Positions 4,915 to 57,486 of a stretch of 64,000 nt of DNA are shown one piece after another (the first letter of the stretch is position 1; each line of letters starts with the position of its first letter). Below the pieces are notes generated by a model. The model saw only the letters and a program-made list of their open reading frames with translations, was not told the origin of the DNA and ran no database searches. The translations under genes and the position numbers were made by a program. Origin of the DNA: Hypanus sabinus (Eukaryota); the NCBI RefSeq assembly GCF_030144855.1, contig NC_082718.1, positions 90,148,001 through 90,212,000 on the forward strand, written 5' to 3'.

Positions 4915-5135
4915 ACAAAATCTGCAGATGCTGGAAATCCAAGCAACGCACGCACACAATGCTAGAGGAATTCAGCAGGTCAGGCAACATCTATGGAAAA
5001 GAGTAAACAGTCGACATTTTGGGGCTGATGAAGGGTCTCAGCCTAAAACGTCGACTGTATTCTTTTCCATGGATGCTGCCTGGCCTGCTGAGTTCCTCCA
5101 GCATTTTGTATTACTTTGATTTCCAGCATCTGCAA
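4915..5135. mobile_element. Short palindromic Penelope-derived element with a decayed hammerhead motif
   Basis: Inverted arms TGCAGATGCTGGAAATC...GATTTCCAGCATCTGCA; CTGATGA AGGG..CCT AAAACGTC core. Confidence 0.7.
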
Positions 5136-10800: not shown

Positions 10801-11359
10801 GTCATAGCTTCTTTTAGTGTTTAGATGCCACTCGCTATATTAAGATCTTGCTAATGTAGACTGTGCCACAAAGAACTGATGCATCTGTATATTTACTCAT
10901 GGGAAATGAACAAACTGGTGATTATTTGTTGTGTCAGTGGATTGTCAAGGTCATTACTAAATAAAAAGGTCCGAAGGTTCATTTATTATCAAAGTGTATA
11001 GAACTCTGAGATTCGTCTTCTCCAGATAGCCATGAACCAAAGCATGGAAGTCATTAAAAGAAAAGCAAATCTTGCAAACAGCAGCACGATTATCAACTCC
11101 CCACCCCACGCAAAAGAACTAACAAATCGCACCAAACAGCAGCAAGAACATCAGACCCCCATCCCCCTCACTCACACAAAAAGATTTGCAAGTCACGCCA
11201 GATGGCAACAAGAAAGCACAGAAAATAATGTGCGTTGTAAAGATTGTATAATGAAATGACTGCCTGTAGGACAATCTGCCTTTTTTTTTGCTCCAAATCA
11301 GTATTCTTTTATTTAATTGCTTTGTTGCTGTGGATTTAATAATGTTCTGTCTTTTACAG

Positions 11360-11591
11360 GTGTTTCACTACCTGAGTATTACTATTCTGATCATCTTTAT
11401 TCTGGAGTTAGCTGGGAAACTGTATGCCTTCCGCTTAGAATTTTTCTGGCACAAATTTGAAGTTCTGGATGGTGTCATAGTAATTGTATCATTCGTTCTT
11501 GATATCGTCTACATTTCCCGGGAAGATGCTTTTGATGGTCTGGGCTTGCTCATACTACTGCGACTATGGAGAGTGGCAAGAATAATAAATG
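11360..11591 (+). CDS. HVCN1: Hv1 coding exon 3, S2-S4 (VFHYLS...[12 protein letters not shown])
   Basis: 232 nt, AG/GT bounded, RxWRxxR Hv1 signature. Confidence 0.97.
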
Positions 11592-11679
11592 GTACATTTT
11601 ATTATAGAGTATCTTTAAATGTAGTGAAGAGGTGGGGAAATGGATCTCTTTGTTATAAATATTTTTGCTTGGCATAGGC

Positions 11680-18385: not shown

Positions 18386-19432
18386 AAAATACTCTGCAGA
18401 TGCTGTGGTTAAAGCAACACGTGCAACACTCTGGAGGAACTCAGCAGGTCGGGCAGCATCCGTGGAAGCAAACAGTCAACATTTCGGGTCGAGACCCTTC
18501 ATCAGGACAGAAGAGGGAGGGGGCAGGGGCCCTATAAAGAAGGTGGGAAGGAGAAGGCTGGTAGGTGCCAGGTGAAAAACCAATAAGAGGAAAGAGCACG
18601 GGGTGGGGAAGGGAAAGCAGGGAGGGGATAGGCAGGAAAAGTGAAGAAAGAATGTAAGGGAAAAGCACTATGGGTAGTAGAAGGCGGCGGAATCATGAGA
18701 GGGGTGATAGGCAGCTGGAGGAGGAGGCAGAGTGAAACTGGGATGGGGGAAGGGAGAGGGAGGGAATTACCAGAAGTTGGAGAATTTAATGTTCATGCCA
18801 AGGGGCTGGAGACTACCTAGACGGTATATGAGGTGTTGCTCCTCCAACCTGAGTTTGGCCTCGTCATGGCAGTAGGGGAGGCTATGTCTGGACATATCCG
18901 AATGGGAATGTGAAGCAGAGTTGAAGTGGGTGGCAAGTTCACATTCCCATTTGGATACGTCTATACATGGCCTCTTCTATTGCCATGACGAAGCCAAACT
19001 CAGGTTGGAGGAGCAACACCTCATATACCGTCTGTGTATCCTCCAGCCCCTTGGCATGAACATTGAATTCTCCAACTTCCAGTAATTCCCTCCCTCTCCC
19101 TTCCCCCATCCCAGTTTCACTCTGACTCCTCCTCCTCCAGCTGCCTATCACCTCTCTCATGATTCTGCCTTCTACTACACAGTGCTTTCCCCTTACATTC
19201 CTTCTTCACCTTTCCTGCCTATCCCTTCCCTGCTTTCCTTCCCCCACCCCTTGATCTTTCCTCTTATTGGTTTTTCACCTGGCACCTTCTACCCTCCCCC
19301 CACCTTCTTTATAGGGCCCCTGCCCCCTCCCTCTTCAGTCCTGACGAAGGGTCTTGGCCCGAAACGTTGACTGCTCGTTTCTATGGATGCTGCCCGATCT
19401 GCTGAGTACCTCCAGTGTGTTGTAAGTGTTGC
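18386..19432. mobile_element. Penelope-like element remnant arranged as a ~500-bp-arm inverted repeat
   Basis: Arms ~18413-18915 and ~18939-19432; GIY-YIG C-terminal-like peptide LRLEEQHLIYRL...GMNIEFSNF; hammerhead cores; flanking 15-bp direct repeat TTGTCACTTAAGTTC. Confidence 0.85.
19333..19373 (+). ncRNA. Minimal type I hammerhead ribozyme motif (Penelope pLTR type)
   Basis: CAGTC-CTGACGA-AGGGtcttggCCC-GAAACGTT-GACTG: stem I, core, stem II, palindromic ACGT stem III, GUU triplet. Confidence 0.7.
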
Positions 19433-24226: not shown

Positions 24227-25786
24227 TTTAAAACAATTTGTCCAGATGGTACGCATCACAATCTTTATGCATCGCTGCAGATGGCATATATATTTAGAGC
24301 TTAACATGGTTCCAATTAAATAAGTTGTTATGTCCTGAACAGATAAGAAATCTTTGAGTGTTGCTGGGCTTGTAGTTACCTAGGCTGGGGGAGATTATTC
24401 CATTATGTTCTTGACGTGTTTTGTAGATGGTGCATTCCCTGAAATAATCAAACAGGGAATATGTGTTTTACTCCTTAAAGAACGTGGAGATTAATGTAGT
24501 AGAGATCCACAAAAGTTTTTATTTAATTTTCATTTAAATCAGAACATTACCGGTCTATTATTATTGAGCATATCCTTCCTCCCAATGAGCTTCAAGACTT
24601 GAGGCCGAGTAACAATCTTTAATAGTGCCATAGTCCAAAACTTCAATTCAACTCTCAGTACTATGTCACAATGACTCGGCCCAAATATTCAGGTTTTCAG
24701 TGACCTATTAATTTTATAATTATGATCCAACATTCCCCACTGCTTGTCTTTGGTCTTTAATGCTATTTCAATTCAAGATTTGTACAGTCCTCTAAACCTT
24801 AACTTTATTTCTCCTGTTAAGAACTTCTTTTACATCATCATCTCTTGCCTATTAACCATTCTTTGCTACATGCTAATTTATAGCAGTTGCATAATATGAC
24901 AGATACAGAAATAAAAGAAAATACAGAAGATACAGAAAATAACAGAAATAATTATCACAGAGAAATGCAATATAAGCATTACTAAAGAATTCCATCACAG
25001 AACAATCAGGCAAATTAAATTTAGAAATGTGTTTTATAAATTTACTTGAATCCATTTAAAATTTTTCATTGTATAGTGATGTATTTTCACTTGCTACCTG
25101 GCAAATCAAACTCTTGGTAGGAAGGCCTACCACCAAGTCCCAAGTAAAGAATATTTTACTTCTCCATATGCATTGGTGCTATATCTAACCAGCTCATCTC
25201 CACCTACCTTGGGTAATCATCAGCAGAGGAAGGAAGTGAGGGAGGCAAGCACAACTTAAGCTTAGAAACATGATCTCACTCTTTTTCACTGTTGAATAAT
25301 GGAGCCCCTCCAGCACAGGTGTAATATAGTTTGATTTTCCTGGGATTAGATTATATCACATACAGGCTCACAAGATTTCTGGTGTAAAATAAGTTCTGTG
25401 GTGATGTTTCAGAAGTACTTGTTAAAGCTACTGCAACAAAGAGGAAGATGCTCAGTTAAAAGAGCTACAAAGAGTGAGAGGTACAGTGCTAAGGCTTGGT
25501 AAAGACTGGAGCCTTTGCTGGTACTTTTAACCATATTGGAAGAGCAAGGGATATTCTGTGTAAATTTATTTGTGAATTCAGTGTCTCAATTCTACTATCA
25601 TCCCCATTGTTTGGCTATGGATGTCCTGGTAATAGAAACAAGGTAGAAAGAAATTTTACAGAAAGCTGTGCCCCCTCTCTTAATTCTTTCCATTGCTAAT
25701 GTTTTACCTGAGAAAGGTGAGCCAGATATATCCCTTACATTGATATAGGAGGAAAATTTAGCTGTCAGTGAGTTAGTGGTAGGTCT

Positions 25787-28700
25787 TGTTATGTTTCTTA
25801 ACTATAAAACATAAAACTAATCAAAAGAAAAACACAGGGAGACCAGGAGCATGATTCATTATTACTTTAAGTGAGGTGCCCACTTCTGACGTGGTGGCAT
25901 CATGACGTAAGCCATTCACATACTTTTACACATAACCCACAATTAATTATTTAAACAAATAAAAAAAAAGTTAAATCTGACAATATTTACAATATTACTC
26001 AAATATTAAATATATGATACTGCTCCCTACTTAGTTATACACTCCAACTCAATATAGAATTCTTCTCAACTATCCACAGCATAGCAAATTTGAAATTGCT
26101 ACATTCAGGCCTAACAAGTTCATCGCGGTGGAGGATTTCTTACTCTTGTGGGATAATGTCTCTCCTGACAAGGGAGGTTGCTTGGCTTGGCAGGAGAGAC
26201 GTGGCTGTGAAACAATCTCAAGTTCTGGACCCTCATCCATGGTTGGCTGTAGGAGTTGGCTCTGGGGCTACAGAAGTGGTTCTGACAGTTCTAAATATTT
26301 TCTCTGGACTTGTTGGCATCCCAAGCAGTGCATGGCAAACTGCTCAATCAGCTGATCTATCCTAGGCCACCAAAGCTTTCATGTTGACCACACCTAAATG
26401 ACTAGCATGTAGCTCCTTCAACACCTTAGCTCTTAACTTGGATGGTACAAAAACTTTCCACATAGGGCAACTCACGACAAGAGCAAGTTCATCCTGACAC
26501 TGGTAAAAGTGGGGGAATTGGAATTTCTGCTGCATATTCTAGCCATTTTGGGTGGCCATGCAGATCTGAGACAGTGCAGAGTCTTTACTGGTTTCCCTTT
26601 GGATCATCCCTGCCAAGGTAGAGAGATTTTTGATTTGTGTTAGGGAGAATACGTCAAGAGGAGTGTCTGTTTTTAAAAAATATTCATGTATTTCCAAGGG
26701 TAAACAGGACAATCCATCAGCATTTCCATGATTGGTTGTCCTCTTGAATTCTATCTTGTAACTTGTGTCCTCCAAGAAACAGAGCCCATCCCTGCACATG
26801 TGCTGTTGCTGTTAGTGGGACACCCTTCTTTGGATCAAGAATGGACACTACTGGTTGATTATCAGTAATGAGTGTAAATTCTCTCTCATACAAGTACTGG
26901 TTGAAATGTTTTAACACCCCACACCAGACTCGAGGCCTCTGTCAGTCTGTGGATATTTTTTCTCTGCTGTAGTAAGGGAATGTAATGCAACGTTCAATTC
27001 CATCACTCATAACGTGCCATGACTACACCTATACCATAAGGCATCACAGACAAGCTTCACTGGACGATGTGGATCATAATGTGTGAATACAGAGTCTGAT
27101 GCCACCATTTCCTTTGCCTTTTGGAAAGTCACCTCACACTGCTTTGTCCAATGTCATTTATTCCCCATCTGTAGTAATCCATTCAAGAGGTGGAGCACAG
27201 TAGCCAGGTTTGGCAGGAACCTGTTATAGTAATTGACAATTCCTAAAAAGCACCACAACAGTGACATGTCCTTTGGCCTTGTGGCATCCACCACTGCTTG
27301 AATTTTCTCAGCACACTTCTGTAATCCTTGTGTGACCACAATAAGTAATGCTTGGTTTAAAGAATTCACATTTATTGCATCATGCTCTGAGCCCCTAATC
27401 TTCTAATTTTTTAAAAACACCGTCCTGAGGTTTTGGAGATGTTCCTTGTCATCTTCACCAATAACAATAATGTCATCTACAGTTGAAGTCAGAAATTTAC
27501 ATACACCTTAGCCAAATATATTTAAACTCAGTTTTTCACAATTCCTGACATTTAATCCTAGAAAACATCCCCTGTCTTAGGTCAGTTAGGATCACTACTT
27601 AAATATCAGTACAATAGTAGAGAGAATTATTTATTTCAGCTTTTATTTCTTTCATCACTTACCCAGTGGGTCAGAAGTTTACATACACTTTGTTAGTATT
27701 TGGTAGCATTGGCTTTGAATCGTTTAACTTGGGTCAAATGTTTTGGGTAGCCTTCCAGAAGCTTCTCACAGTAAGTTGCTGTAATGTTGTTCCATTCCTC
27801 CAGTCAGGTGTGTAGGCCTCCTTGCTCACACACACTTTTTCAGTTCTGCCCACAAATTTTCTATCAGATTGAGGTCAGGGCTTCGTGATTGCCACTCCAA
27901 TACCTTGACTTTGTTGTCCTTAAGCAATTTTGCCACAACTTTGGAGGTATGCTTGGGGTCATTGTTCATTTGGAAGACCCATTTGTGACCCAGCTTTAAC
28001 TTCCTGGCTGATGTCTTGAGATGTTGCTTCAATATATCCACATAATTTTCCTTCCTCATGATGTCATCTATTTTGTGAAGTGCACCCGTCTTTCTGCGGC
28101 AAAGCACCCCCACAACATGATGCTGCCGCCCCTACGCTTCATGGTTGGGATTGTGTTCTTCAGCTTGCAAGCCTCACCCTCCAAACATAACAATGGTCAT
28201 TATGGCCAAACAGTTCAATTTTCGTTTCATCAGACCAGAGGACATTTCTCCAAAAAGTAAGATCTTTGTCCCCATGTGCACTTGCAAACTTTAGTCTGGG
28301 TTTTTTAATGACAGTTTTGGAGTAGTGGCTTCTTCCTTGCTGAGCAGCCTTTCAGATTATGTCAATATAGAACTCGTTTTACTGTGGATATAGATACTTG
28401 TCTACCTGTTTCCTCCAGCATCTTCACAAGGTCCTTTGCTGTTGTTCTGGGATTATTTGTACGTTCATCTCTAGGAGACAGAATGCATCTCCTTCCTGAG
28501 CGGTATGACGGCTGCGTGGTTCCATGGCGTTTATACTTGCGTATTTGTACAGATGAACATGCTACCTTCAAGGGTTTGGAAATTGCTCCCAAGGATGAAC
28601 CAGACTTGATATCATTTTCTGACCTCAATCCAATAGAAAATTTGTGGGCAGAACTGAAAAAGCATGTGCGAGCAAGGAGGCCTACAAACCTGACTCAGTT

Positions 28701-28849
28701 ACACCAGTTCTGTCTGGAGGAATGGAACAAAATTCCATTCATGTACTTTTACATATTACCTGTAATAAATTATTTATATAAACAAATTCTTAATCAACCA
28801 ATATTTATAATATTACTCAAATATTACTAGGAATATTAAATACACAACA
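25787..28849 (-). mobile_element. Degenerate Gypsy (Ty3) LTR retrotransposon, internally deleted
   Basis: TG...CA ends, 5-bp TSD GGTCT; LTR ~25787-26019 and LTR remnant ~28734-28849; pol peptides FLGIVNYYNRFLPNL, FTLITD, HGNADGLS. Confidence 0.85.
27480..28738 (-). mobile_element. Sleeping Beauty-like Tc1 transposon (IR/DR type), rearranged, nested in the Gypsy element
   Basis: TA + CAGTTGAAGTCAGAAATTTACATACAC outer DR; inner DR CCCAGTGGGTCAGAAGTTTACATACAC; transposase peptides ENYVDILKQHLKTS, DPKHTSK, SPDLNxIENLW. Confidence 0.92.
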
Positions 28850-28966
28850 GGTCTTTTCACCAAGAGTTTGATTTATAGATATTATAGTTTCCATGGAAGT
28901 TTGCATTAGTTTACCCAATGAAAATTACTTTACATTTAAAAAGAAACATCTTCTATGGGCTTTTAA

Positions 28967-29190
28967 ACACAAGAAATTCTGCAGATGCTGAAATCTTGAT
29001 CAACACACATAAGTTGCTGTAGGAACTTATCAAGTAAGGCAGTATCTATGGAATTGAATCAACAGTTGACATTTCCTGCTGACACCATTCATCAGGACTG
29101 GAACGGAAGAGGAGTCAAAATGTTGACTGTTTATTCCCCTCCATAGATGCTGCCTGACTTGCTGAGTTCCTCCAGAACTTTATGTGTGCT
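28967..29190. mobile_element. Short palindromic Penelope-derived element
   Basis: Same family as 4915-5135, inverted arms. Confidence 0.6.
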
Positions 29191-29288
29191 TCTATAGGCT
29201 TATACACGGTATTTCACTGAATAAATGCCAGGATTGTATATCCATTGACGTGCGTTAAAGAAAAATCAAATGATTTCACCAGACCTAC

Positions 29289-29429
29289 CGCATAATACAG
29301 CCAGAGTTTAAGTTGTATCCAAAAAGTACTGGCGTCCGGAACCCTACCATCTGTAGACAATCTTGGTTGGCTGAACTCTTCATGACTGTCAGCTGCCCAA
29401 ATCTGTTTTTGCTTTGAATTATACCAACA
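29289..29429 (-). CDS. TCTN1: Tectonic-1 exon 11 ([14 protein letters not shown]...[14 protein letters not shown])
   Basis: 141 nt, AC acceptor, RTPVLFGY motif. Confidence 0.95.
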
Positions 29430-31020
29430 GTGGAAAGACTCAGTTAAGCAAAAACATTTGAATAAAGCAAGGAAAAATGGGATTTCTGGAAAAATACTAA
29501 AACGAATCCTTCTTAATTAAAATTGTAGGATGCCAAACACTGCAGCTTTGGAAAGTTTAATTAAGTCCTGATATATTAGTTTGTAAACCATGCTTGGTTT
29601 GAGAATACCTACATGTTTAATTTGTAGATTTTGCTGTGGCCTTCTGGGCAAGATGACATGGATCTGCTTACTTCCCAAAGTTAAATATAAAATTGAATTA
29701 ATTTAAAATGAAGACAAAAAAACAAGATAAACCAGCCTGTTTGAATGGAAATAAAAAATGGAGTAATCATGACTTGATGTTGTCAAAACTTTCAAACGTA
29801 TTTCCACACATTATTGAATGGAGTATTCCTGTTTGAGGAACAAATATAGATGTCAGATTGTTTAGCAACTTAGTGTAGAAGGAGATGAATTACTTTTGCA
29901 TTATGCAAGTGGCTGAAAGCAATGCAGTTTTATAGAATGACACTGAAAAAATTGACTAAAGAAAGCATCACCAAATCAAAATTCCAAAACTGATAGAATT
30001 GAAATATAAACAAAAATATTAAAATACTCAGCAGCATTAGTGCAGAATTACTGAGACAAGCAAATAAATAAAATCTAGATGAAGAGGAGCTGTAATTAGC
30101 AAAAGCAGAATTGTTACCAACAAAAAAGAGACATTGTAATGATGTCCAATTGTTGAACTTAAAGCTACAATTTGCACACCTGAAATAGAAGGTATTCTTT
30201 CCCAAGATTCTGTTGAGCATTATTACAACAGTGTAGGGGACCAAGAAGAGAGATCAGATTGGGAGTAGGCTGGAGAATTAAAATGAGTGACTATTAACTG
30301 AGGATCACGTTTGCAAACTCATCAAAAGTTCAACATTTGTGGCAAGAGACTGCATCATAATAAGTGAGTGCTAGATACTAAATTGAACAATTTACAATAA
30401 AATCACGATCATCTGGAAGAAACACTGAGGTCTGATAGGAAAGGAAGAACTTAAAAAGCCAGGAGCTGCTTTTCAGTCTTCAAAGGAGAAAAACTCAAGT
30501 TGAATTATTCAACCTCCAAGAGGCCACAACCTTGTTGAAGGGTTTGGAGACTTGCATGTCTCAATAACACAGAGAGCTACGTTGGCTGGTGTAAGGGCTT
30601 TATGCTTTGGTTTTTGGTAGGGTCACTTATACCAAACAGGTCAAAGGGTAGACGCTAGATGAAGAGTGGTCCATCGATGCTCTAGGTTTAAGGGTTCTGC
30701 TCAGGGCTAACAATCCTGACTGGTCAAACAAACTTGTTACAGAAATAGCAATGAAGATTCTCTCTACATCTGAACGTGATGGTATTTCGGAGCCTCCACC
30801 CGGCACTTGCATGATTAACAGTAGTGAAAAACAAGAGGAAGCTACTGACACCATGAACAAAGTCCTGAACACCACCAGAGATGGAGGACCTTCATTGCTG
30901 CCCTAAACACCAGTGGCACAACAGGCAGTAAATAATTGATAAGATCATGTTCAACTGAGCCTTCGTTGTGTATACAGTATTTAGTTTATACTGTAAAAGA
31001 TAACTTGCATGAAAGGATAT
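29430..31020 (-). other. U12-type (minor spliceosome) AT-AC intron, TCTN1 intron 10
   Basis: 5' ATATCCTTTC; branch site TTGCTTAAC (29451-29443); 3' TTTCCAC; splicing here restores the reading frame. Confidence 0.93.
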
Positions 31021-31106
31021 GTGGCATTTGGTCCAAATCCAGCCACTAGAGGGAGTCCAACAATGTAGCCAGGATTTCCACTGACGGGAACTCCCACTGT
31101 GTTTTC
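31021..31106 (-). CDS. TCTN1: Tectonic-1 exon 10 ([16 protein letters not shown])
   Basis: Tectonic SGNPGY motif; ends at a U12 donor |ATATCCTTT. Confidence 0.96.
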
Positions 31107-33162
31107 CTACAATTTAAAAGGACATTTATGAGTAAACAAAAAAAAAATCCTTAAAAAGCATCCTTAAACGTGACAACTTCAAAAATTACAATAAATACAC
31201 TGAGCTGGATGTTGGTCTGTTAAAAGGATTAACGCTGTTCTTTAGAGTAAAATACATACAAGTTTAATAATGTCAGTCAATTAACAATTTCTTTCAGTAG
31301 GCTTTAAATGGCACAAATATATTGAGGGATTTCCTAGTGAAGGTCATCCAAGGCTTTTAAACTTTAAAATTCAGGGGCATAACATAATGGGTCTGAGCTC
31401 CATACAGGATTTGAATACAGTTATAAGGAAAGCACTAATGAAGTTGTTGTACTTTAGTTTGATATTAATGATGGCAACCCCACAACGGTAAAGTGAGGGC
31501 TTCACCATTGTACCAGTGAAGTAATATCATGAAAAAAATGTATTAATCATCTCCTTACTGCTTGAAGAATTCTGTTTCTTCACCTTGCTACGTTTTCCTA
31601 CATAATAATAACTCATCACATGTGAATTACTTTGGGACCATTGAAAGCAGATAAAATGTGATGCAAGCGCAAAAGCAAGTTTTCCTTATTAACTTTTTTT
31701 CTATACATCAGGAATAAAATATAATGTTTTTGCAACTTGCCTATTTATTAAAAAGATCCAAGAACACGTCTGTGTGGTTAGACTTTGAACGTGGGTACAG
31801 AATGACCTTTCATAATCTTAGAAGAAGATCATCTTCAGAGAATCCTTTATTTATTTCTCATTCTGTTTTACAACTTAAGTTATAAACACTCAATATGTCA
31901 GGTAACATCTGAGGAAAAACAAAGCATTGAAAATGCAGGGGTTAGGGGAAATTGAGAATTGTAGTGAAATCTCGTTGAGGGCTGAAGAAATTGCAAAGAA
32001 TGATCCTTTGAATGTGGAGGCTGGTGGGATGGAAAGTAAGGACCAAAGGATGTCTATTCTTTCTCTATCAGGAAGTGCAGAAAAAGTGAAGTCAACTATG
32101 GTGTAGGAGTCCAAAGTTCAGGAAAGAGAATATCTCAGACCCATGTACAAGTGCTCAATATCACAGTTGATATGATGGGTTTAGAGGACTGGATATAGAA
32201 TTCAACTATTTATGATAACGCACTCTATCCATTTGCACAAATAAATAAGAAAACCTATTATCCAAGTGGGATCCAGGTGCACAATTCGCAAGAGGCTAAC
32301 AAATAGATACAGCAAATAATTCAGGAAACTAACAGTAAGTTACTGCTTACAGTGGTAATACAGAAGGACCATTCTACTTCAGTTATCCAGGAGATTCATA
32401 TGTACTGTATTGGTTGCCTTATTGTGAAAGGTGTGAGTGTTTTGGAAACAGTCTGAAGAACATTTGCTGGCTGGAATGATCACATTGACTCATCAGGGAA
32501 GATTGGACAGGCTAGACGTAGCTACTAGACTTTAGAAGAATCAAAGAGAATGATATGAACATAGAAGATGCTAAGAAGTCTTGGCAGGATGGTTGTGGAG
32601 AGGATATTTGATTTAGAGATGTACAGCACAGAAACAGACCCCTTGGCCCAACTTGTATGTGCCACCAAGGTTCCTTCATGAGCTAGCCCTATTTGCCTGC
32701 AAATGGCCCATATCTCTCTAAACCTTTCCTATTCATGCATGTGCCCAAATACCTTTGAAATCCATGAGGTCAGTGGAAAATGCTACAGCTTTGGTGCTCA
32801 ATATGAGTCTGGGCCAAGCAAAATCATATTTCTGTAACAGAATGTAAGATGTCTAATCACCCCATCAATGCCCACCAGAAAGGTGCAAGAGAAATCCAGT
32901 TAGTCTCATTTCCTAATGCTTTCCCTATGGTCCTACAATTATTTTTCTTTCAAATATCTACCCGCTTTCCTCTTCAAAGCAACAAATTAGTCTCCTTACA
33001 CCACTCCCTTAGGTAGTGAATTCCTGACTATGACTTTTTTTGTCACATCACTTTGGTCTTAAAACAGTTTTTGCTCATAATATTTCCCCAAGTTAAACAA
33101 TAAGCCTGACCTTAGAAATCTGAAGAATTTAAGGAAGGAAGAAAATAGAAAAAAAATTATAA

Positions 33163-37036: not shown

Positions 37037-40000
37037 CTTTTTTCTTTTTAAATCTTTTTATTAGTTTTAAACAAACCTAAATGAAACATGAATACAAAAT
37101 GCTTGAGAGTACATAATTAATAGTTTAAATAGACATTCAGATATGTAATAATAAAAATATATAACCTCTCAAACCCAGAACAATAATGAACAAAGAAGTA
37201 AAAAGAGAAAAAAAAAGAAAAACCCCCAAAAAAAAGAAAGAAAAAAAAAGCAAAAAAAAACACTAACCAACATGGGCCATTGAATAATATTAAGTACATA
37301 TACAGTAGTGCCAATAACTCCGAACCTCCATCCAATTAATTAAGGATAATATAAGTAAGGTTTAGGAAAAGACAATTCAACTCATGTGAAAATGTTGAAT
37401 AAAAAGTCTCCAAGTTTCTTCAAATTTAACTGAAGAATCAAAAACCACACTTCTAATTTTTTCTAAACTCAAACAAGAAATTGTTTGAGAAAACCACTGA
37501 AATACAGTTGGAGGATTAATTTCTTTCCAATTCAATAAAATAGATCTTCTAGCCATTAACGTAACAAATGCAATCATTCGTTGAGATGAAGCAGATAAAC
37601 GATTATTATCCGTCATTGGTAAACCGAAAATTGCAGTAAGAGGATGCGGTTGAAAATTAATATTTAAGACTTTTGAAATAATACTGAAGATATCTTTCCA
37701 AAAATTTTGTAAACAAGGACAAGACCAGAACATATGAGTCAATGAAGCAACATCAGAATGACATCTATCGCAGGTTGAGTTAAGATGAGAATAAAATCGA
37801 GCCAGTTTATCCTTAGACATATGAGCTCTATGTACAACCTTAAATTGTATTAGGGCATGTTTAGCACAAATAGAGGACGAATTTACCAATAATAAATTTT
37901 TTTCCCATTGCTCAGTAGATATAGGACAATGCAACTCTTCTTGCTATTCTTAATTTTTTCTGATACATCTAACTGTAAATTCATGATCATCTTATAAATG
38001 ATGGCTACCAAATCCTTTTGATAAGGATTAAGAGCTAAAATTCTATCTGTAATGTCCAATGGACATTCTTTCGAAAAAGACTGTAACTCATTATACAAAA
38101 AATTTCTAACTTGAAACTATCTAAAAAAATGGGTTTTAGGTAAATTATATTTATTAGATAGCTGTTCAAAGGACATAATGTTATCATCCAGAAACAGATC
38201 ACGAAAACATGTTATACCTTTTGTTTTCCATAAAAGAAAAGCTTGATCCATAGATGAAGGCCGAAAAAAATAATTAGATATTATAGGACATGATAAAATA
38301 AATTTATTCAAACCAAAAAATTTACCAAATTGAAACCAAATTCGTAATGTATATCTGACTATAGGATTAGTTATCTGTTTATTCAATTTGAATAAAGAAA
38401 AGGAAATGAAGATCCTAAGATTGAAATCAGTGAAAAATCTTGCACAGATTTACATTCCAAATTTACCCATTGTGGGCAAGTAGCTATAGTCCATTCTTGT
38501 GTCCAGAATATTAAATACCGCATATTGACTGCCCAATAGTAAAATCTTAAGTTTGGTAAAGCCTCCTTCTTAGGCTTCTGTAAATATTTTTTACCCAATC
38601 TAGGATTTTTGTTCTGCCACAAGTAAGAAGATATTTTAGAGTCAATAGTATCAAAAAAAGCTTTAAGAATAAAAATTGGTAATGCTTGAAATAAATATAA
38701 GAATTTAGGTAGTATCATCATCTTAATAGCAATAACTCTACCAACCAATGACAAAGATAGTGGAGACCACCTAATAGCAAGTTGCTTAATTTGATCAATT
38801 AAAGGCAAAAAGTTAACCTTAAATAGATCTTTATGTTTTTTAGTAATTTTAATACCTAGGTAAGTAAAATAATCTGTAACAATTTTATATGGTAAATGTT
38901 TATAAATTGGAACTTGCATATTTAATGGAAATAGTTCACTCTTGTTAAAATTCAATTTATAACCAGAAAAATTACTAAATTGAGCAAGCAAAGACGAAAT
39001 AGCAGGGATAGATTTTTCAGGGTCAGATATATATAATAACAAATCATCAGCGTACAATGATACTTTATAAGTCCTCTCCCCATGGGTAATACCCAGAATA
39101 TTAGGTGATTCACGAATAGCTATAGCCAACAGTTCTAAAGCAATGTCAAATAGTAAAGGACTTAAAGGGCAACCCTGCCTTGTACCACGAAATAGCTGAA
39201 AAAAAGGGGATCTTTGATTATTGGTAAAAACCGAAGCTAAAGGTTTATGGTATATTAATTTAATCCATGATATAAATTTTGAACTAAAATTAAATTGTTG
39301 CATTGTAGTAAATAAATATGGCCATTCAACTCTGTCAAATGCTTTTTCAGCATCTAAAGATATAACACATTCTGGTATTTTAGATGAAGAAGTATAAATA
39401 ATATTAATTAATTTTCTAATGTTAAAAGATGAATAGCGAATTTTAATAAATCCAGTCTGATCTTCAGAAATAATTCGAGGTAATATATTTTCTAATCCAA
39501 TAGCCAAAACTTTACTGAAAATCTTAAAATCCGTATTTAATACGGATATAGGCCGATAGGATGCACATTCAGTAGGGTCTTTATCTTTTTTAAGAATTAA
39601 AGAAATAGAAGCTTCATAAAAAGATTGTGGTAAGTTACCTACACTTAATGCATCTTTAAAAATTTTACAAAGCCAAGGAGAAAGTATAGGAGAAAAAGAT
39701 TTTAAAAATTCTACAGGAAAACCATCTGGACCAGAAGCTTTACCAGAATTCATTAAAGAAATAGCCTTTTGTATTTCAGATTCCGTAATAGGTGTATCTA
39801 AAATTACATTATCCTCAACAGTTACTTCTGGAATATTCAATTTCCTTAAAAATTCATTTATTATAGAAGAGTCCTTAGTGAATTCTGATTGATATAAGGA
39901 GTTATAAAAATCTTGAAAGGCTCTATTTATCTCTTTGTGATCGATCGTCAGAGTACCATCTTGTTTACGAATTCTAGTAATCTGTCGTTTATCCGAAACA

Positions 40001-40200
40001 ATTTTCAATTGGTTAGCCAATAATTTACCAGACTTATCTCCATGCATATAGAATTGAGTTTTTGATTTAATTAACTGACTTTCAATCGAAGAGGATAATA
40101 ATAAACTATGTTCCATTTGAAGTTCCACTCTTTCTTTATAAAGTTCTTTACTAGGAGTCATTGAATAAATTTTATCAATTGCTTTGATTTTATCAACTAA
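37037..40200 (-). mobile_element. L1-clade LINE copy A, 5'-truncated, RT domain retained
   Basis: DAEKAFDRV, GTRQGCPLSP, YADD, C-terminal CCHC-like region; A-rich tail; 11-bp TSD TGTCAGAAGTT (37026-37036, 40201-40211). Confidence 0.95.
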
Positions 40201-40269
40201 TGTCAGAAGTTGTAAATACATTCACAGCTTAGAAACTTTATACACATATGAGTATGTTACGTTGAGTGT

Positions 40270-44631: not shown

Positions 44632-46100
44632 TCAGAAGCCCTTACAATCTACTCCCATACTGTTGTTTTGCTCTTGTTCATCCTGCAGGTGTTGTAGGCT
44701 GTAACAATACATCTTCGGTGCTTCTTTCTCCACTATGCTTGCTTCAGTAATTGCCATGAGCATCGGAAATTGTTTGGTTGCAGCACGCACTACAAGAGAC
44801 TTGAGGTAAGGAAGAGAACAGCACAGCACAAGCGCATAGCTCAACAATACAATACTGACAGTTATTGCCATTTTAGTCAGCCTTGCTCCCCATCCTCCGA
44901 GTCTACTTTCTAACCAGTCAAATACCTGATGTCCGAACCCTGCATTCTGTTTAACTTCCTTTCTTAGACTTTTAAACTTATACATTACCTTAGTAAACGA
45001 TCCTTCTGGACTAATGTTATTTGGTATAAAGGTACAGCACTTCTCTCTAAACATCACACAAACTCCTCCTTTTTCTGCCAACAGCCAGTCCAATGCTTGT
45101 CTATTCTGCCACGCCATTTTGCTAGTTGCATCTAACTGTTCTCCCAAGGCCTCCAGTGCATCATTGGTGTAGTTGATGAATCTTTGCTGATTGTAATATA
45201 TATATAATTTATCCATTCAACATTCTTAATAGTTCCTATCAAGGGTAGAAATGTTTTGAAGCCTGCAGCAATCTCATTTCTCACCTTAAATTTGTTAGGT
45301 ATACCTTTCGGCTGTCCTATACTATCTATCCGGATCGTCGAGTCGGGTTCATATTTTCTTCTTTTCTGCAATAGTGTCTGCTGTTCAGAGATATCAGTGT
45401 TGAAGAGTACTTCAGGGGATACTATAACTTCTTGAAGTAGCATAACACGTGCCCAATTGATGGGAAGCGTAGACCTCCTTCCTTACCACACTGCCACCAG
45501 GTGTCCGCTAAGGGGATGGTCTGTGCGTCCAATGCACCTTCGGGTGGAGGGGAACCTACTATGTGTCTTTCACCTGGAGTTACATCCCACATCTGAGTGC
45601 AGCTACCTCTGAAATGACCCACTGGATGAGCACCTTTCCTCATAAAACATTCATAGTTCAACTTATACTGCATTATAAGCTGTCCAGTGTAGGTGTCTTG
45701 CTTCTTTTGTTTACAGCCCATGGTCTGCTGTAGTTGCAGTCAGAGGCAAGCTTGTGTTGATCAAACTGCAAGGAAGCCTGATATAACATACACCAATATG
45801 GGCACATTGGTGCGTTTCTCATACAGCTTTGATACCAGGGATCTGTTATAACACAAAGCTTCAGGAAGCAAGCCTTAATCGAACCGTCGTTCACATTGCT
45901 CCCTATACTCTCTTTGCCACCGTGTGCAAGTGGAGAAGTTATAAGGCATGGGATCTACATGCTGAGTGGGGCTTTCCCTTGAGCACAGGTAACAATTCTG
46001 TCTCGTCATCATTCCTGCTGTGTAAGTTGCCCATTGATACCACTGATTAGTACATGTCTATAACCATGGCGAGGAGATGAGTGTTGTACTCCTCTTACTT
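44632..46100 (-). pseudogene. env: Gamma-type retroviral envelope pseudogene
   Basis: Env peptides split across frames (44632-45216, 45132-45443, 45422-45721); basic cleavage site QKRRK. Confidence 0.88.
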
Positions 46101-52726: not shown

Positions 52727-55700
52727 CTTTTTCTTTTTAAATCTTTTTATTAGTTTTAAACAAACATAAATGAAACAGGAATACAAAGTGTTTGAGAGTA
52801 CATAATTAATAGTTTAAATAGACATTCAGATACGTAATAATAAAAATATATAACCTCTCAAACTCAGAACATTAATGAACAAAGAAAAAAAAAGAAAAAA
52901 CCCAAAAAAAAGAGGGAAAAAAAGCAAAAAAAAAACTAACCAACATGGGCCATTGAATAATATTAAGTACATATACAGTAGTGCCAATAACTCCGAACCT
53001 CCATCCAATTAATTAAGGATAATATAAGTAAGGTTTAGGAAAAGACAATTCAACTCATGTGAAAATGTTGAATAAAAGGTCTCCAAGTTCCTTCAAATTT
53101 AACTGAAGAATCAAAAACCACACTTCTAATTTTTTCTAAACTCAAACAAGAAATTGTTTGAGAAAACCACTGAAATACAGTTGGAGGATTAATTTCTTTC
53201 CAATTCAATAAAATAGATCTTCTAGCCATTAATGTAACAAATGCAATCATTCGTTGAGATGAAGCGGATAAACGATTATTAACCGTCATTGGTAAACCGA
53301 AAATTGCAGTAAGAGGATGCGGTTGAAAATTAATATTTAAAACTCTTGAAATAATACTGAAAATATCTTTCCAATAATTTTGTAAACAAGGACAAGACCA
53401 GAACATATGAGTCAATGAAGCAACATCAGAATGACATCTATCGCAGGTTGAGTTAAGATGAGAATAAAATCGAGCCAGTTTATCCTTAGACATATGAGCT
53501 CTATGTACAACCTTAAATTGTATTAGGGCATGTTTAGCACAAATACAGGATGAATTTACCAATAATAAAATTTTTTCCCATTGCTCAGTAGATATAGGAC
53601 AATGCAACTCTTCTTGCTATTCCTTCTTAATTTTTTCTGATACATCTAACTGTAAATTCATGATCATCTTATAAATGATGGCTACTAAACCCTTTTGATA
53701 AGGATTAAGAGCTAAAATTCTATCTGTAATGTCCAATGGACATTCTTTTGAAAAAGACTGTAACTCATTATACAAAAAACTTCTAACTTGAAAATATCTT
53801 AAAAAAAATGGGTTTTAGGTAAATTATATTTATTAGATAGCTGTTCAAAGGACATAATGTTATCATCCAGAAACAGATCACGAAAACATGTTATACCTTT
53901 TGTTTTCCATAAAAGAAAAGCTTGATCCATAGATGAAGGCCGAAAAAAATAATTAGATATTATAGGACATGATAAAATAAATTTATTCAAACCAAAAAAT
54001 TTACCAAATTGAAACCAAATTCGTAATGTATATCTGACTATAGGATTAGTTATCTGTTTATTCAATTTGAATAAAGAAAAGGAAATGAAGATCCTAAGAT
54101 TGAAATCAGTGAAAAATCTTGCACAGATTTACATTCCAAATTTACCCATTGTGGGCAAGTAGCTATAGTCCATTCTTGTGTCCAGAATATTAAATACCGC
54201 ATATTGACTGCCCAATAGTAAAATCTTAAGTTTGGTAAAGCCTCCTTCTTAGGCTTCTGTAAATATTTTTTACCCAATCTAGGATTTTTGTTCTGCCACA
54301 AGTAAGAAGATATTTTAGTGTCAATAGTATCAAAAAAAGCTTTAGGAATAAAAATTGGTAATGCTTGAAATAAATATAAGAATTTAGGTAGTATCATCAT
54401 CTTAATAGCAATAACTCTACCAACCAATGACAAAGATAGTGGAGACCACCTAATAGCAAGTTGCTTAATTTGATCAATTAAAGGTAAAAAGTTAACCTTA
54501 AATAAATCTTTGTTTTTTAGTAATTTTAATACCTAGGTAAGTAAAATAATCTGTAACAATTTTATATGGTAAATGTTTATAATTTACCAATAATTTACCA
54601 GACTTATCTCCATGCATATAGAATTGAGTTTTTGATTTAATTAACTGACTTTCAATCGAAGAGGATAATAATAAACTATGTTCCATTTGACGTTCCACTC
54701 TTTCTTTATAAAGTTCTTTACTAGGGGTCATTGAATAAATCTTATCAATTGCTTTGATTTTATAAACTAATGTTAATATTTTAGAATTAGTTTGTTTCCT
54801 AACTCCAGCAGAGTATGAAATAATCTGTCCACGAATATATGCTTTAAAAGTATCCCACAAAATTCCACTAGAGATCTCTGCTGTAAAATTTGTTGAGAAA
54901 AACAAATCAATTTGTTGTTTAATAAAGTTAACAAAGTCTAAATCCTGCAATAAAATAGGATTAAACCTCCAAAATTTAGCATTGATATATGAATCCGTTA
55001 TTTTAATAGATAACTTCAGAGGTGCATGATCAGGTATGGTAATACAGTCATATTTACAATCAGTAACATCTGTGAGTAAATGGTGATCAATGAAAAAGTA
55101 ATCAATTCTTGAGTAATTATGATAAACATGGGAAAAGTATGAAAATCCTTTGTCATTAGGGTGTAGAAAACGCCAAATTTCACAAATAGCTGAACCAATC
55201 ATAAAAGAGTTAATAAGAGAAGCCGATTTATTCGGAAGAGTTTTGGTAGGCTTGGATCTATCCATCACAGTTAAAACATCACAGTTGTTGGATCTATCCA
55301 ACAACAGTTAAAATCCCCACCCATTATCAGTCTATATTGATTCAGATTAGGAAAGGATGTAAATAAGCATTTAAAAAATTCAGGACAATCAGTATTTGGA
55401 GCATAAACGTTAACTAAAACAACTTTCTGATTAAAAAGTAGACCAGTAATAAGCAAAAATCTACCTTGTGGATCTGAAATTGTTTCATGATGTATAAAAG
55501 AAGTTGATGAGTCTATAAGAATAGGAACACCTCTTACTTTGGCTTGCGAATTTGCGTGATACTGTTGGCCCTTCCAAAACCTAAAAAAACATTGACTATC
55601 CACCTTCCTTACATGAGTCTCCTGCATAAAAATAACATTGGCATTCATTCTATGGAATATTTTGAATATTTTTTTTCGTTTGATCGGATGATTTAAACCA

Positions 55701-57486
55701 TTAGTATTCCAAGAAACAAAATTAATAATCCTATCCAAATTAACAATATTTATTACAGTTAACACATAAGTTTAAAAAAAAAGTGAACTCATGAACCCGG
55801 AAGAAGGAAGTGAGTTCAAGGAGAAACCGGAAGTCACGGCACTGCAACCATTTTTGTAGTTTCATATAGGCCCATGAAATAAATCTATGCAAAAAGCAAG
55901 CAAAAAGAGAAAAAAGAAAAAGAAAAATTCCGCTCCCTCCACCCCAGGAAAAAAGCCAAAAAGAGGCAAGCAGGCAATCTAATATTAAAATTACCCCCGT
56001 GTCTCAGGATGGCAACTCAGACAAAAAAAATTGAAAAAAATACAAACAACCCATATTATAAGAAAGGGTTAATATAACAAAAGTTAAAATATAAAATTAG
56101 TATTATATATATAAAACAAAAGGGTTAAAAAAATTAAATTGATAAAACCCATAAATAAATACTACTAAATTAGTATTTTAAATGAGAGTTTAAAACTTTC
56201 AAACTCATCAAAACGGATATGACGTTCCAAGCACTAGAGTCTGTCGGGAAGAAGAAACGCCATTTTTTTAAAAAATCTTAATATTTAAATGTTAAAAATA
56301 TAAAAAAGCTTATACAAACTTAAAAAAGGAACCCTAATCAGTTATTTTCAAGGTTAATAGATTAATAAAATATAAAAAATAATAAGATCAGAATAAACCA
56401 AAAAAAGAGTACTTTTACAATATATAAAAAATACATGTCAACCATACTTAAAAAAAACCCATCATTCTGTAAGAGATCGAAATTTATAGACTAATTATTA
56501 CATTAGTCAATCCGATAGAGTGTCATTGTTCCAAAAAACTTTGAGCATCCGCTGGAGATTTAAACAGCCGAACAGTTCCATTTTCAGAAGTAACTCTCAG
56601 ATGTGCTGGAAATAACAGCGCTTGCTTGTAGCCTTCCTGGTGAAATTTTGACATAACCGGTCTAAAAGCCATTCTTGCCCTTAAAACTTCAGGGCTATAA
56701 TCTTCCAAAATACGAAATTTAAATTCTTGAAAGTTAATCATACCCTTTTTCCGAGCTGCCCGAATCAGACGCTCTTTGATACGAGGGTAATGGATCCAGA
56801 GAATTACATGCCGTGGTTTATCTGAATCAGAATGATAGCGAGAGATACGGTGTGCACGATCAATTATTGGAGGAGAGTCCAGAACTTCTGAACCGAAGAC
56901 ATCCATTAGAAGTTTAGAAAAGACAACGGTAAGATCACTGCTCTCAAATTTTTCCGGAATCCCAATTAGCCGAAGATTTTGTCTTCGAGAGCGATTTTCA
57001 AGATCAGTAATTTTAGATTTATAACGATCCATCTGTTGAGAAGTCGAAGCTTGCTCGTGTTACAAAGTTTCGATAATATGTTCTTTCTTACGAGCGGCTT
57101 CTTCAAGTACCAAAATACTTGCTTGTTGTTTTTGTAGTTCCAGTGAAAGTGTTTTAAGTTCTCCTTCGAATGATTTTAAACGCTCATCAAACGCAAAAAG
57201 CTGTTCAGTAATTTTTCTCTCCAGACCCGCAAATTTATCTTCTATAAGCTTTACAATAGTTTCTAAAGTTATCGGTTCTTTCGTCTGTTTTGATTCTTTT
57301 ACTTTAGACATTTCAGAGAGTTGAAAATAGATCGAATAGTTAAAAAGAAAAATTCTGTATGTTTAAACCCCTTTAGAATAAGTATAAAAAGATCATTTAA
57401 GGGGTGTTTGTAGGTTAAGAAGACGTAAAAGGTTTGGAGCAAAGCCAAAAGCGGTTTACTCCATAAGCGCCATCTTGAGACCTCTC
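52727..57486 (-). mobile_element. L1-clade LINE copy B: intact 5' end, ORF1 (57311-56523, frameshifted), ORF2 endonuclease (from 55765), RT domain deleted
   Basis: ORF1 LENRSRRQNLRLIGIPE; EN SWNTNGL, QETH, GGDFN, SRIDY; 12-bp TSD GCATTGCATTTT (52715-52726, 57487-57498) at a TTTT/AAAA site. Confidence 0.95.

What the first reader, a model, noticed from the sequence alone, without database searches (positions are those of the whole stretch)
27480..28607. Sleeping Beauty-like Tc1 in a probable cartilaginous fish: horizontal-transfer candidate
Seen: a ~210-bp IR/DR end with two DR cores and transposase peptides such as [23 protein letters not shown] and MRKENYVDILKQHLKTSARKLKLGHKWVFQ. From recall, both the protein and the non-coding IR/DR closely match the salmonid-derived Sleeping Beauty sequence; no alignment was run. 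The host genes here (TCTN1) are far more diverged from bony-vertebrate orthologues, so vertical descent of such a similar non-coding end is unlikely.
Basis: partly seen in the sequence, partly recalled or inferred. Interest (0 to 1): 0.7.

Follow-up and report, generated by a model that had tools for sequence, protein, structure and literature searches.

The report
Dead Sleeping Beauty transposon in ray
An intron of a ray's tectonic (TCTN1-like) gene holds a broken, one-ended copy of the jumping-gene family from which Sleeping Beauty was rebuilt in salmon-family fish; it is far too similar to trout copies to be inherited from a shared ancestor, so it shows a known kind of cross-species transfer in a host group not yet published for this family.

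Summary
Window 27480-28607 is the right IR/DR and about 85% of the coding region of an SB-clade Tc1/DD34E transposon on the minus strand. All three quoted peptides are present. PDB searches hit only Sleeping Beauty transposase (E 2e-42).

Against two rainbow-trout copies fetched here, the ray copy is 87-89% identical without gaps. The two trout copies are 90.6% identical to each other. The non-coding spacer between the two direct repeats is 88-89% identical.

Two LINE families in the window have their best named relatives in rays (Mobula 84%, Leucoraja 80%, Hypanus 70%), so the host is a batoid, not a teleost. Vertical descent over the shark/ray versus bony-fish split cannot explain this similarity, and horizontal transfer is supported.

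The copy is dead. It lacks the left end and the first ~19 codons, carries five private coding deletions (plus one in the IR), a premature stop and N at catalytic D244, and is joined to an inverted 130-bp piece of the same family.

A 2022 survey found the SB clade in 107 ray-finned fishes and one mollusc, but in no cartilaginous fish.

This scan had already noted at least 13 other places in this genome with the same family, several of them followed up with the same conclusion. This copy adds little. It is a new member of a known kind.

The parts
27478..27479 (.). TA dinucleotide abutting the transposon terminus (the Tc1/mariner target site)
   Evidence: Read directly. Both trout copies also have TA next to the same terminus in alignment A1. 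A duplication cannot be checked because the other end is missing.
27480..27691 (-). Right (3') IR/DR of the element: outer DR at about 27480-27511, inner DR at about 27662-27691, and a spacer between them carrying a private 15-bp deletion
   Evidence: Against the trout copies the outer DR is 89-93% identical, the inner DR 91%, and the spacer 88-89%.
27692..28607 (-). 3' UTR and transposase pseudogene, from about SB residue 20 to the C-terminus
   Evidence: PDB hits to the SB catalytic and PAI/RED domains; Pfam DDE_3 and HTH_SB. Private deletions of 6, 18, 7, 1 and 20 bp lie after 28544, 28459, 28178, 28092 and 27802. There is a stop codon where the trout copies have CGA, and N at SB position 244.
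28609..28737 (+). Inverted fragment of the same family, covering about SB residues 280-320 and truncated at both ends
   Evidence: 91-93% identical to the trout copies. It forms inverted repeats I1 and I2 with 27780-27878. It keeps the 20 bp that the main body has lost.
26365..27477 (-). Flanking Ty3/Gypsy pol fragment (RT thumb, RNase H, start of integrase) into which the right end is inserted at the RT YxDD motif
   Evidence: Pfam RT_RNaseH; translations. No RT sequence continues beyond 28741.
29288..29415 (-). Nearest host exon: a tectonic-domain exon (TCTN1-like). It places the relic in an intron, in the same orientation as the gene
   Evidence: Pfam PF07773 TCTN_DUF1619, E 1.7e-6, above the cut-off. 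An HVCN1 exon lies on the plus strand within the frame 11288-11677.

Best explanation
This is a dead, one-ended and rearranged relic of a cut-and-paste DNA transposon. It belongs to the SB clade of Tc1/DD34E, the salmonid Tss1 / Sleeping Beauty lineage, and lies in an intron of a tectonic (TCTN1-like) gene of a batoid ray.

In an intact element, the transposase binds the two direct repeats in each roughly 210-230-bp IR/DR, excises the element and reinserts it at a TA. Here only the right IR/DR survives and the gene is broken many times, so the copy can neither make transposase nor be mobilised. It has no function (inferred).

Its presence is explained by horizontal transfer of an SB-clade element between ray-finned fishes and the ray lineage, either directly or through a third organism. 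Transfer was followed by transposition in the ray germ line and then neutral decay. Later rearrangement or deletion removed the left end and joined an inverted piece of the same family.

Shown here: family membership, the anatomy, the batoid host, and near-neutral identity to trout copies. Inferred: the transfer itself, its age (probably tens of millions of years), and the order of the rearrangements. Unknown: donor, direction and vector.
For: Family: the only PDB hits are Sleeping Beauty transposase domains. The named protein hits among the best 120 shown (1361 hits in all) are all Oncorhynchus Tc1-like fragments.

DNA identity: two O. mykiss loci from GCA_900005705.1 were fetched. They align from the IR terminus across 1.1-1.2 kb at 83-84% with gaps counted and 87.1-88.8% without gaps. 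The two trout copies are 90.6% identical to each other. In the three-way alignment the ray copy has 77 private substitutions in 1114 sites (6.9%), against 5.3% and 3.4% for the trout copies. The ray founder was therefore almost identical to the trout-type master.

Non-coding parts are just as similar. The spacer between the direct repeats is 88-89% identical and the repeats themselves 89-93%.

Host: CR1-like RT hits Mobula hypostoma at 84% and Leucoraja erinacea at 80%, then Stegostoma, Pristis and Callorhinchus, with no teleost among the top hits. L1-like ORF2 hits Hypanus sabinus at 70-71%, with teleosts at no more than 56%. A tectonic exon and an HVCN1 exon are present in the window.

Integration signature: a TA lies next to the exact terminus, inside a Gypsy RT motif.

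Distribution: a TBLASTN survey of NCBI assemblies found the SB clade in 107 Actinopterygii and one mollusc, and in no Chondrichthyes (PMC9777934). Its only cartilaginous-fish entry is ZB-like in Callorhinchus milii.
Against: Host identity rests on two LINE families and on synteny, not on a host-gene phylogeny. I could not name the species.

No dS comparison between the transposon and host genes was possible.

Only two trout copies served as reference, and they were chosen from the best hits to the ray peptide. This may overstate closeness to trout relative to other teleost orders. Unnamed ENA hits are equally close, so a non-salmonid donor is not excluded.

Copy number in this genome is known to me only from other agents' unchecked notes.
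Confidence: 0.85

Rival explanations
1. Vertical inheritance: the family was present in the common ancestor of cartilaginous and bony vertebrates and was kept similar by constraint.
For: Transposase and DR binding sites are under selection while a family is active, which slows divergence of those parts.
Against: The copies compared are pseudogenes with stops and frameshifts in both hosts. The 150-bp spacer between the direct repeats is 88-89% identical. The ray-to-trout distance nearly equals the trout-to-trout distance. A constrained host exon (HVCN1 S2-S4) is only about 67% identical in amino acids to a bony vertebrate, and LINE proteins are no more than 56% identical to teleost ones. The SB clade is absent from sarcopterygians and was not found in Chondrichthyes in 2022 (PMC9777934).
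Confidence: 0.01
2. Artefact: teleost DNA (prey, or salmon-sperm carrier DNA) was assembled into a ray contig.
For: Salmonid DNA is a common laboratory reagent, and on its own the relic looks like any decayed salmonid copy.
Against: The window contains no N. The relic is bounded on one side by a TA at the exact terminus inside a Gypsy RT motif. On the other side lies an inverted fragment and then intron sequence leading to a tectonic exon about 550 bp away. A contaminant would need two chimeric joins inside one contig. Both ray pieces share a state (GGAATGGAAC) not seen in the trout or ENA copies (one site only). Other agents report many further copies in this genome (unchecked by me).
Confidence: 0.03
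3. The host is a teleost after all, so the element is ordinary and vertically inherited.
For: None found, beyond the element itself.
Against: The best named LINE relatives are batoids (Mobula, Leucoraja, Hypanus), then sharks and chimaera. Teleosts are far lower or absent.
Confidence: 0.01
4. The transfer is real but ran the other way, or through a third party: rays or a shared parasite or prey were the source for teleosts, or both groups received the element from the same vector.
For: Nothing here polarises the transfer. Salmonid-type Tc1 sequences have been reported in the nematode Anisakis simplex, with PCR bands in its hosts including the salmon shark (PMC12441823). Tc1 transfers between teleosts and lampreys are documented (PMC3516227).
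Against: The SB clade is spread over 33 orders of Actinopterygii, which makes ray-finned fishes the likelier reservoir. The PCR evidence in PMC12441823 is weak and has no sequence context.
Confidence: 0.1

Closest known systems
Tss1 / Sleeping Beauty (SB clade of Tc1/DD34E), salmonids and other Actinopterygii
   Same: CAGTTGAAGTC terminus, a right IR/DR of about 210 bp with outer and inner direct repeats, and a TA target. The native RKEN214-217 and M243 residues match the fish copies rather than the engineered SB100X. Amino-acid identity is about 85%. Coding DNA is 89% identical and the 3' UTR plus IR/DR 84-90% identical to trout copies.
   Different: The host is a batoid ray. The copy lacks the left IR/DR and the first ~19 codons, has N at D244, several frameshifts and a stop, and is fused to an inverted internal fragment.
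Group 1 Tc1 elements shared by teleosts and northern-hemisphere lampreys (Kuraku et al. 2012, PMC3516227)
   Same: A Tc1 element nearly identical between ray-finned fishes and a vertebrate lineage separated from them by over 400 million years, explained by horizontal transfer.
   Different: A different Tc1 lineage and a different recipient. Their PCR screen was negative in elephant shark, thornback ray and dogfish.
ZB-like Tc1 in Callorhinchus milii (Jia et al. 2022, PMC9777934)
   Same: A Tc1/DD34E element with IRs of about 200 bp and a TA target in a cartilaginous fish, attributed to horizontal transfer.
   Different: A different clade. ZB-like elements have CAGTG termini, and the paper reports CDS identity between the SB and ZB groups of only 52-54%. 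The host is a chimaera, not a ray.
Tas1/Tas2 of Anisakis simplex, with PCR bands in salmon shark (PMC12441823)
   Same: Salmonid-type Tc1 sequences claimed outside bony fishes, including one elasmobranch.
   Different: PCR bands only, with no genomic context or integration sites. The relation of Tas1/2 to this copy was not tested here.

Membership tests
SB clade of Tc1/DD34E transposons | Transposase sequence within the clade (DDE domain well above the 68% identity seen between SB and SB-like) | tested here: met
   Residues 5-94 of the 95-aa frame align to SB100X 5cr4 at E 2.2e-42. By my count this is about 85% identical to the native SB residues. The DNA-binding pieces hit 5unk, 2m8e and 6urs. 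Thresholds are from PMC9777934.
SB clade of Tc1/DD34E transposons | Coding DNA more than 80% identical to clade members | tested here: met
   89.4-89.6% ungapped identity to two O. mykiss copies over 864-870 sites. Those copies are themselves SB-type (P0013 against 5cr4, E 7e-68).
SB clade of Tc1/DD34E transposons | IR/DR ends: inverted repeats of about 200-230 bp, each with an outer and an inner direct repeat, a CAGTT terminus, and terminal-repeat identity of about 65% or more within the clade | tested here: inconclusive
   The right end meets every point: terminus at 27480, direct repeats at 27488 and 27670, and 84-90% identity of the 3' UTR plus IR/DR to trout (spacer 88-89%, repeats 89-93%). 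The left end is absent from the window, so the inverted pairing cannot be shown for this copy.
SB clade of Tc1/DD34E transposons | TA target-site duplication | tested here: inconclusive
   A TA is present at 27478-27479 next to the right terminus. The second TA cannot be checked because the left end is missing.
SB clade of Tc1/DD34E transposons | DD34E catalytic triad (D153, D244, E279) | tested here: not met
   The D153 codon (read from the DNA) and E279 are present, and there is no indel between positions 244 and 279. Position 244 is N in this copy. This is a lesion of a dead copy, also seen in 9 of 120 related fragments, and not evidence against ancestry.
Horizontal transposon transfer (standard criteria) | Transposon similarity between the two hosts far above that of vertically inherited sequence | tested here: met
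   Non-coding spacer 88-89% identical and ray-to-trout distance about equal to trout-to-trout. By contrast the HVCN1 exon is about 67% identical in amino acids to human and LINE proteins no more than 56% to teleosts. A formal dS test was not possible.
Horizontal transposon transfer (standard criteria) | Patchy taxonomic distribution | not testable with these tools
   Literature only: the SB clade is in 107 Actinopterygii and one mollusc, with none in Chondrichthyes or Sarcopterygii (PMC9777934). No eukaryotic genome collection could be searched here.
Horizontal transposon transfer (standard criteria) | Transposon phylogeny incongruent with the host phylogeny | not tested
   Only one ray copy (plus a 130-bp piece) and three outside copies were in hand. 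No meaningful tree could be built.

The most novel reading that the evidence does not exclude
The inverted C-terminal fragment joined to the main body is not a private accident of this locus. Instead it is the internal junction of a ray-specific, non-autonomous derivative with two right ends, which another agent reports at about 95 copies (s1-187813). This copy would then be a truncated member of that derivative. That would mean the SB lineage did more than land in rays: it stayed active there long enough to evolve and amplify its own deletion derivatives. It would imply that a working SB-type transposase once existed in rays, possibly from a donor subfamily marked by N244.
Probability: 0.2. 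Interest if true: 0.45.

Novelty: new member of a known kind. Interest (0 to 1): 0.33.

Why it matters
Horizontal transfer of Tc1/mariner elements among aquatic vertebrates is well documented, so the mechanism is not new. The new point is the host. In the searchable literature the SB clade proper has not been reported from any cartilaginous fish. Its presence in a ray extends the known reach of this lineage across the deepest split of jawed vertebrates. It also offers a dated marker, through presence or absence at orthologous sites such as this TCTN1-like intron, for ray phylogeny and for the timing of the transfer. This particular copy is an inert relic with no expected effect on the host gene. 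It is one of many copies that the scan has already noted in the same genome.

Tried and rejected
There is therefore no read-level check and no read laying; I did not try another route to reads.
- Exact-protein look-ups of three window ORFs (the 612-aa LINE ORF2, the 148-aa junction ORF and the 95-aa transposase frame) found nothing on record. They gave no host accession and no orthologous locus.
- The ENA fragment P0001 seemed to share six of the ray copy's unusual residues. The alignment showed that five of them are the same out-of-frame reading of unchanged nucleotides (VGVLC for WGCFA), so this is not shared ancestry. Rejected as a lineage marker.
- I looked for the missing left end and for continuation of the Gypsy RT beyond 28741. 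Neither is in the window.
- Rfam with permissive thresholds over 25000-31500 gave no hit.
- I did not use the large representative protein search. It returns no names or taxa, so it could not answer the distribution question.
Exons were looked at singly, by reference.

Full report
**Observation**

The stretch was read on both strands. On the minus strand there are two long open frames and several short ones. The frame 28362-28628 (88 aa) holds [11 protein letters not shown] and [12 protein letters not shown]. The frame 27826-28113 (95 aa) holds MRKENYVDILKQHLKTSARKLKLGHKWVFQ.

At 27480 the sequence CAGTTGAAGTCAGAAATTTACATACACC begins, directly after a TA (27478-27479). The 19-nt DR core occurs twice, at 27488 (one mismatch) and 27670 (none), and nowhere else in the 64-kb window. 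Shuffles give 0.02 matches by chance.

**What it is**

Searches against all PDB chain sequences hit only Sleeping Beauty transposase:
- the 95-aa frame hits the SB100X catalytic domain 5cr4 (E 2.2e-42);
- the 88-aa frame hits the RED subdomain 5unk (E 1.7e-13) and the PAI subdomain 2m8e/6urs.

Pfam gives DDE_3, and gives HTH_SB below Pfam's gathering cut-off because the frame holds only part of the domain. The frame keeps the native RKEN at SB positions 214-217 and M243, where the engineered SB100X has DAVQ and H (the SB100X changes are from my own knowledge).

A word search of 5.8 billion proteins gave 1361 hits. Every named hit among the best 120 is an Oncorhynchus Tc1-like fragment. That database holds many salmonid fragments of the right length, so this shows affinity but does not identify the donor.

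**DNA comparison**

I fetched the DNA around two O. mykiss fragments from GCA_900005705.1, as loci L001 and L002. P0013, which lies in L001, is itself SB-type (E 7e-68 to 5cr4). L002 carries the outer-DR 27-mer exactly as I recalled it for SB.

BLASTN aligns the ray copy to both loci from the very IR terminus over 1.16-1.20 kb, at 83-84% with gaps counted. In the MAFFT alignment A1, ungapped identities are:

| Comparison | Whole alignment | Coding part | 3' UTR + IR/DR | Spacer between DRs | Outer DR | Inner DR |
|---|---|---|---|---|---|---|
| Ray vs trout copies | 87.1%, 88.8% | 89.4-89.6% | 84-90% | 88-89% | 89-93% | 91% |
| Trout vs trout | 90.6% | 93.2% | 87.7% | 91.4% | 96.4% | 82.6% |

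Site patterns give 77 ray-private substitutions in 1114 sites (6.9%, JC 0.073). The two trout copies have 5.3% and 3.4% private substitutions. Eleven of the ray-private changes are CpG decay.

The ray copy is thus about as close to a trout copy as two trout copies are to each other. Whatever founded the ray family was nearly identical to the trout-type master. Jia et al. 2022 report within-clade identity of over 80% for coding DNA and 65% for terminal repeats in the SB clade, against 61% and 33% between SB and SB-like (PMC9777934). This copy therefore belongs to the SB clade proper.

**Anatomy and state**

With the transposase on the minus strand, 27480-27691 is the right IR/DR. Relative to both trout copies the ray copy has private deletions of:
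- 6 bp and 18 bp, both in frame, in the DNA-binding domain;
- 7 bp, 1 bp and 20 bp, all frameshifting;
- 15 bp in the IR spacer.

It also has a stop codon where the trout copies read CGA, and N at SB position 244, the second catalytic aspartate. The D153 codon and E279 are still readable.

The alignment stops at about 28607, near SB residue 20. The first ~19 codons, the 5' UTR and the whole left IR/DR are absent from the window.

Directly after the break, at about 28609-28737, lies a 130-bp piece of the same family in the opposite orientation (about residues 280-320). It is 91-93% identical to the trout copies and forms inverted repeats with 27780-27878. It keeps the 20 bp that the main body has lost, so it is not a late copy of the main body. 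Both ray pieces read GGAATGGAAC where the trout and ENA copies read GGAATGGG(A/C)C. This is a single shared ray-specific site.

The copy can neither encode transposase nor be mobilised. It is an inert relic.

**Surroundings**

To the left, on the minus strand, is a Ty3/Gypsy pol fragment with RT thumb, RNase H (PF17917) and the start of integrase. The SB terminus and its TA sit exactly at the RT YxDD motif. No RT sequence continues beyond 28741. A later deletion or rearrangement therefore removed the left part of the transposon together with the upstream part of the Gypsy element (inference).

A direct repeat of about 97 nt, about 80% identical, brackets the whole Gypsy-plus-SB block at 25912-26008 and 28735-28826. 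I have no tested explanation for it.

About 550 bp to the right is a minus-strand exon that matches the tectonic domain PF07773 above its cut-off. An HVCN1 exon lies on the plus strand within the frame 11288-11677. The relic lies in an intron, in the same orientation as the gene.

**Host**

No host record could be retrieved. Two LINE families of the window served as vertically inherited markers.
- The L1-like ORF2 (612 aa) has Hypanus sabinus as its best named hit at 70-71%. Teleosts reach no more than 56%.
- The CR1-like RT (206 aa) hits Mobula hypostoma at 84% and Leucoraja erinacea at 80%. Stegostoma, Pristis, Callorhinchus, turtles and birds follow at about 45-57%. No teleost is listed.

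The host is therefore a batoid, probably a myliobatiform. Other agents' notes on this genome call it a stingray, which I did not verify independently beyond this.

**Why horizontal transfer**

Cartilaginous and bony vertebrates split well over 400 million years ago (established knowledge), and neutral DNA is saturated over that span. Here, pseudogenised coding DNA and a non-coding spacer with no known constraint are 88-89% identical between single decayed copies.

Controls from the same window:
- the strongly constrained S2-S4 exon of HVCN1 is about 67% identical in amino acids to human (my count: 54 of 81);
- LINE proteins are no more than 56% identical to teleost ones.

Contamination is unlikely. 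The relic is embedded in a gap-free contig with a proper TA junction inside a host repeat and a host exon 550 bp away. Without reads, however, I cannot exclude it formally.

Direction, vector and date are open. The 7% private branch is an upper bound on decay in the ray. Elasmobranch substitution rates are generally slow (my own knowledge), which suggests tens of millions of years, but I have no calibrated rate.

**Compared with what is known**

- Horizontal transfer of Tc1 elements among fishes, and between teleosts and lampreys, is established (PMC3516227; that study's PCR was negative in cartilaginous fish).
- Jia et al. 2022 found the SB clade in 107 Actinopterygii of 33 orders and one mollusc. 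Their only cartilaginous-fish entry was ZB-like in Callorhinchus milii.
- A 2025 microPublication reports PCR bands for salmonid-type Tas1/2 in salmon shark, without sequence context (PMC12441823).
- Further searches found no report of SB-clade elements in rays or skates. The main text of the 307-genome survey of horizontal transfer does not mention cartilaginous fishes.

**Earlier notes of this scan**

Fourteen notes on this genome mention Sleeping Beauty, this finding's own among them. The eight shown, all on other DNA, describe such copies. Four of them (s1-146582, s1-233771, s1-216717, s1-228325) reached the same horizontal-transfer conclusion, with 93-95% identity for better-preserved copies. 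One (s1-187813) reports about 95 copies of a non-autonomous derivative with two right ends.

My copy's inverted C-terminal piece points towards a second right end. It may therefore be a truncated member of that derivative. I could not test this.

**Verdict**

This is a new host group for a known transposon clade and a known process. This individual copy is a dead fragment, and the same family has already been found repeatedly in this genome by the scan. Interest is moderate to low.

Noticed in passing
window 25912-26008 and 28735-28826: A direct repeat of about 97 nt, about 80% identical, brackets the whole block made of the Gypsy pol fragment and the SB-type relic. It could be remnants of the Gypsy LTRs, a local duplication made during break repair, or two copies of an AT-rich repeat. 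None of these was tested.
   Followed up: partly
window 27955-27975 (SB residue 244) and proteins P0004, P0013, P0017, P0031, P0044, P0086, P0091, P0097, P0112: The ray copy has N instead of the second catalytic Asp (D244). The same N is found in 9 of the 120 best-matching fragments, including O. mykiss and O. tshawytscha copies. This is either a recurrent G-to-A change or a marker of a non-autonomous subfamily shared by salmonids and the ray.
   Followed up: partly
window 26365-27477 (minus strand): A Ty3/Gypsy pol fragment (RT thumb, RNase H, start of the integrase zinc finger), truncated at both ends. The SB terminus sits exactly at its YxDD motif.
   Followed up: yes
window 37377-40221 and 53050-55765 (minus strand): Two near-identical copies of an L1-like LINE. 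The first has a 612-aa open ORF2 piece, and both have a 185-aa C-terminal ORF differing at a few residues. This suggests a recently active LINE family. Its best named relative is Hypanus sabinus at 70%.
   Followed up: partly
window 44632-45216 (minus strand): A 194-aa open frame that looks like a retroviral transmembrane envelope subunit, with a CX6CC-type motif and a hydrophobic anchor. It is probably part of an endogenous retrovirus. I only observed it and did not analyse it.
   Followed up: no
window 28974-29181; also 4917-5107 and 18430-18508: The stretch between the relic and the tectonic exon is a dispersed repeat. Rfam gave no hit in 25000-31500.
   Followed up: partly
locus L003 (ENA assembly ERZ14207152, contig k141_104947): A 978-bp metagenome contig carries an SB-type transposase fragment as close to the ray copy as the trout copies are (83% amino-acid identity). 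The origin of the sample is unknown to me.
   Followed up: partly
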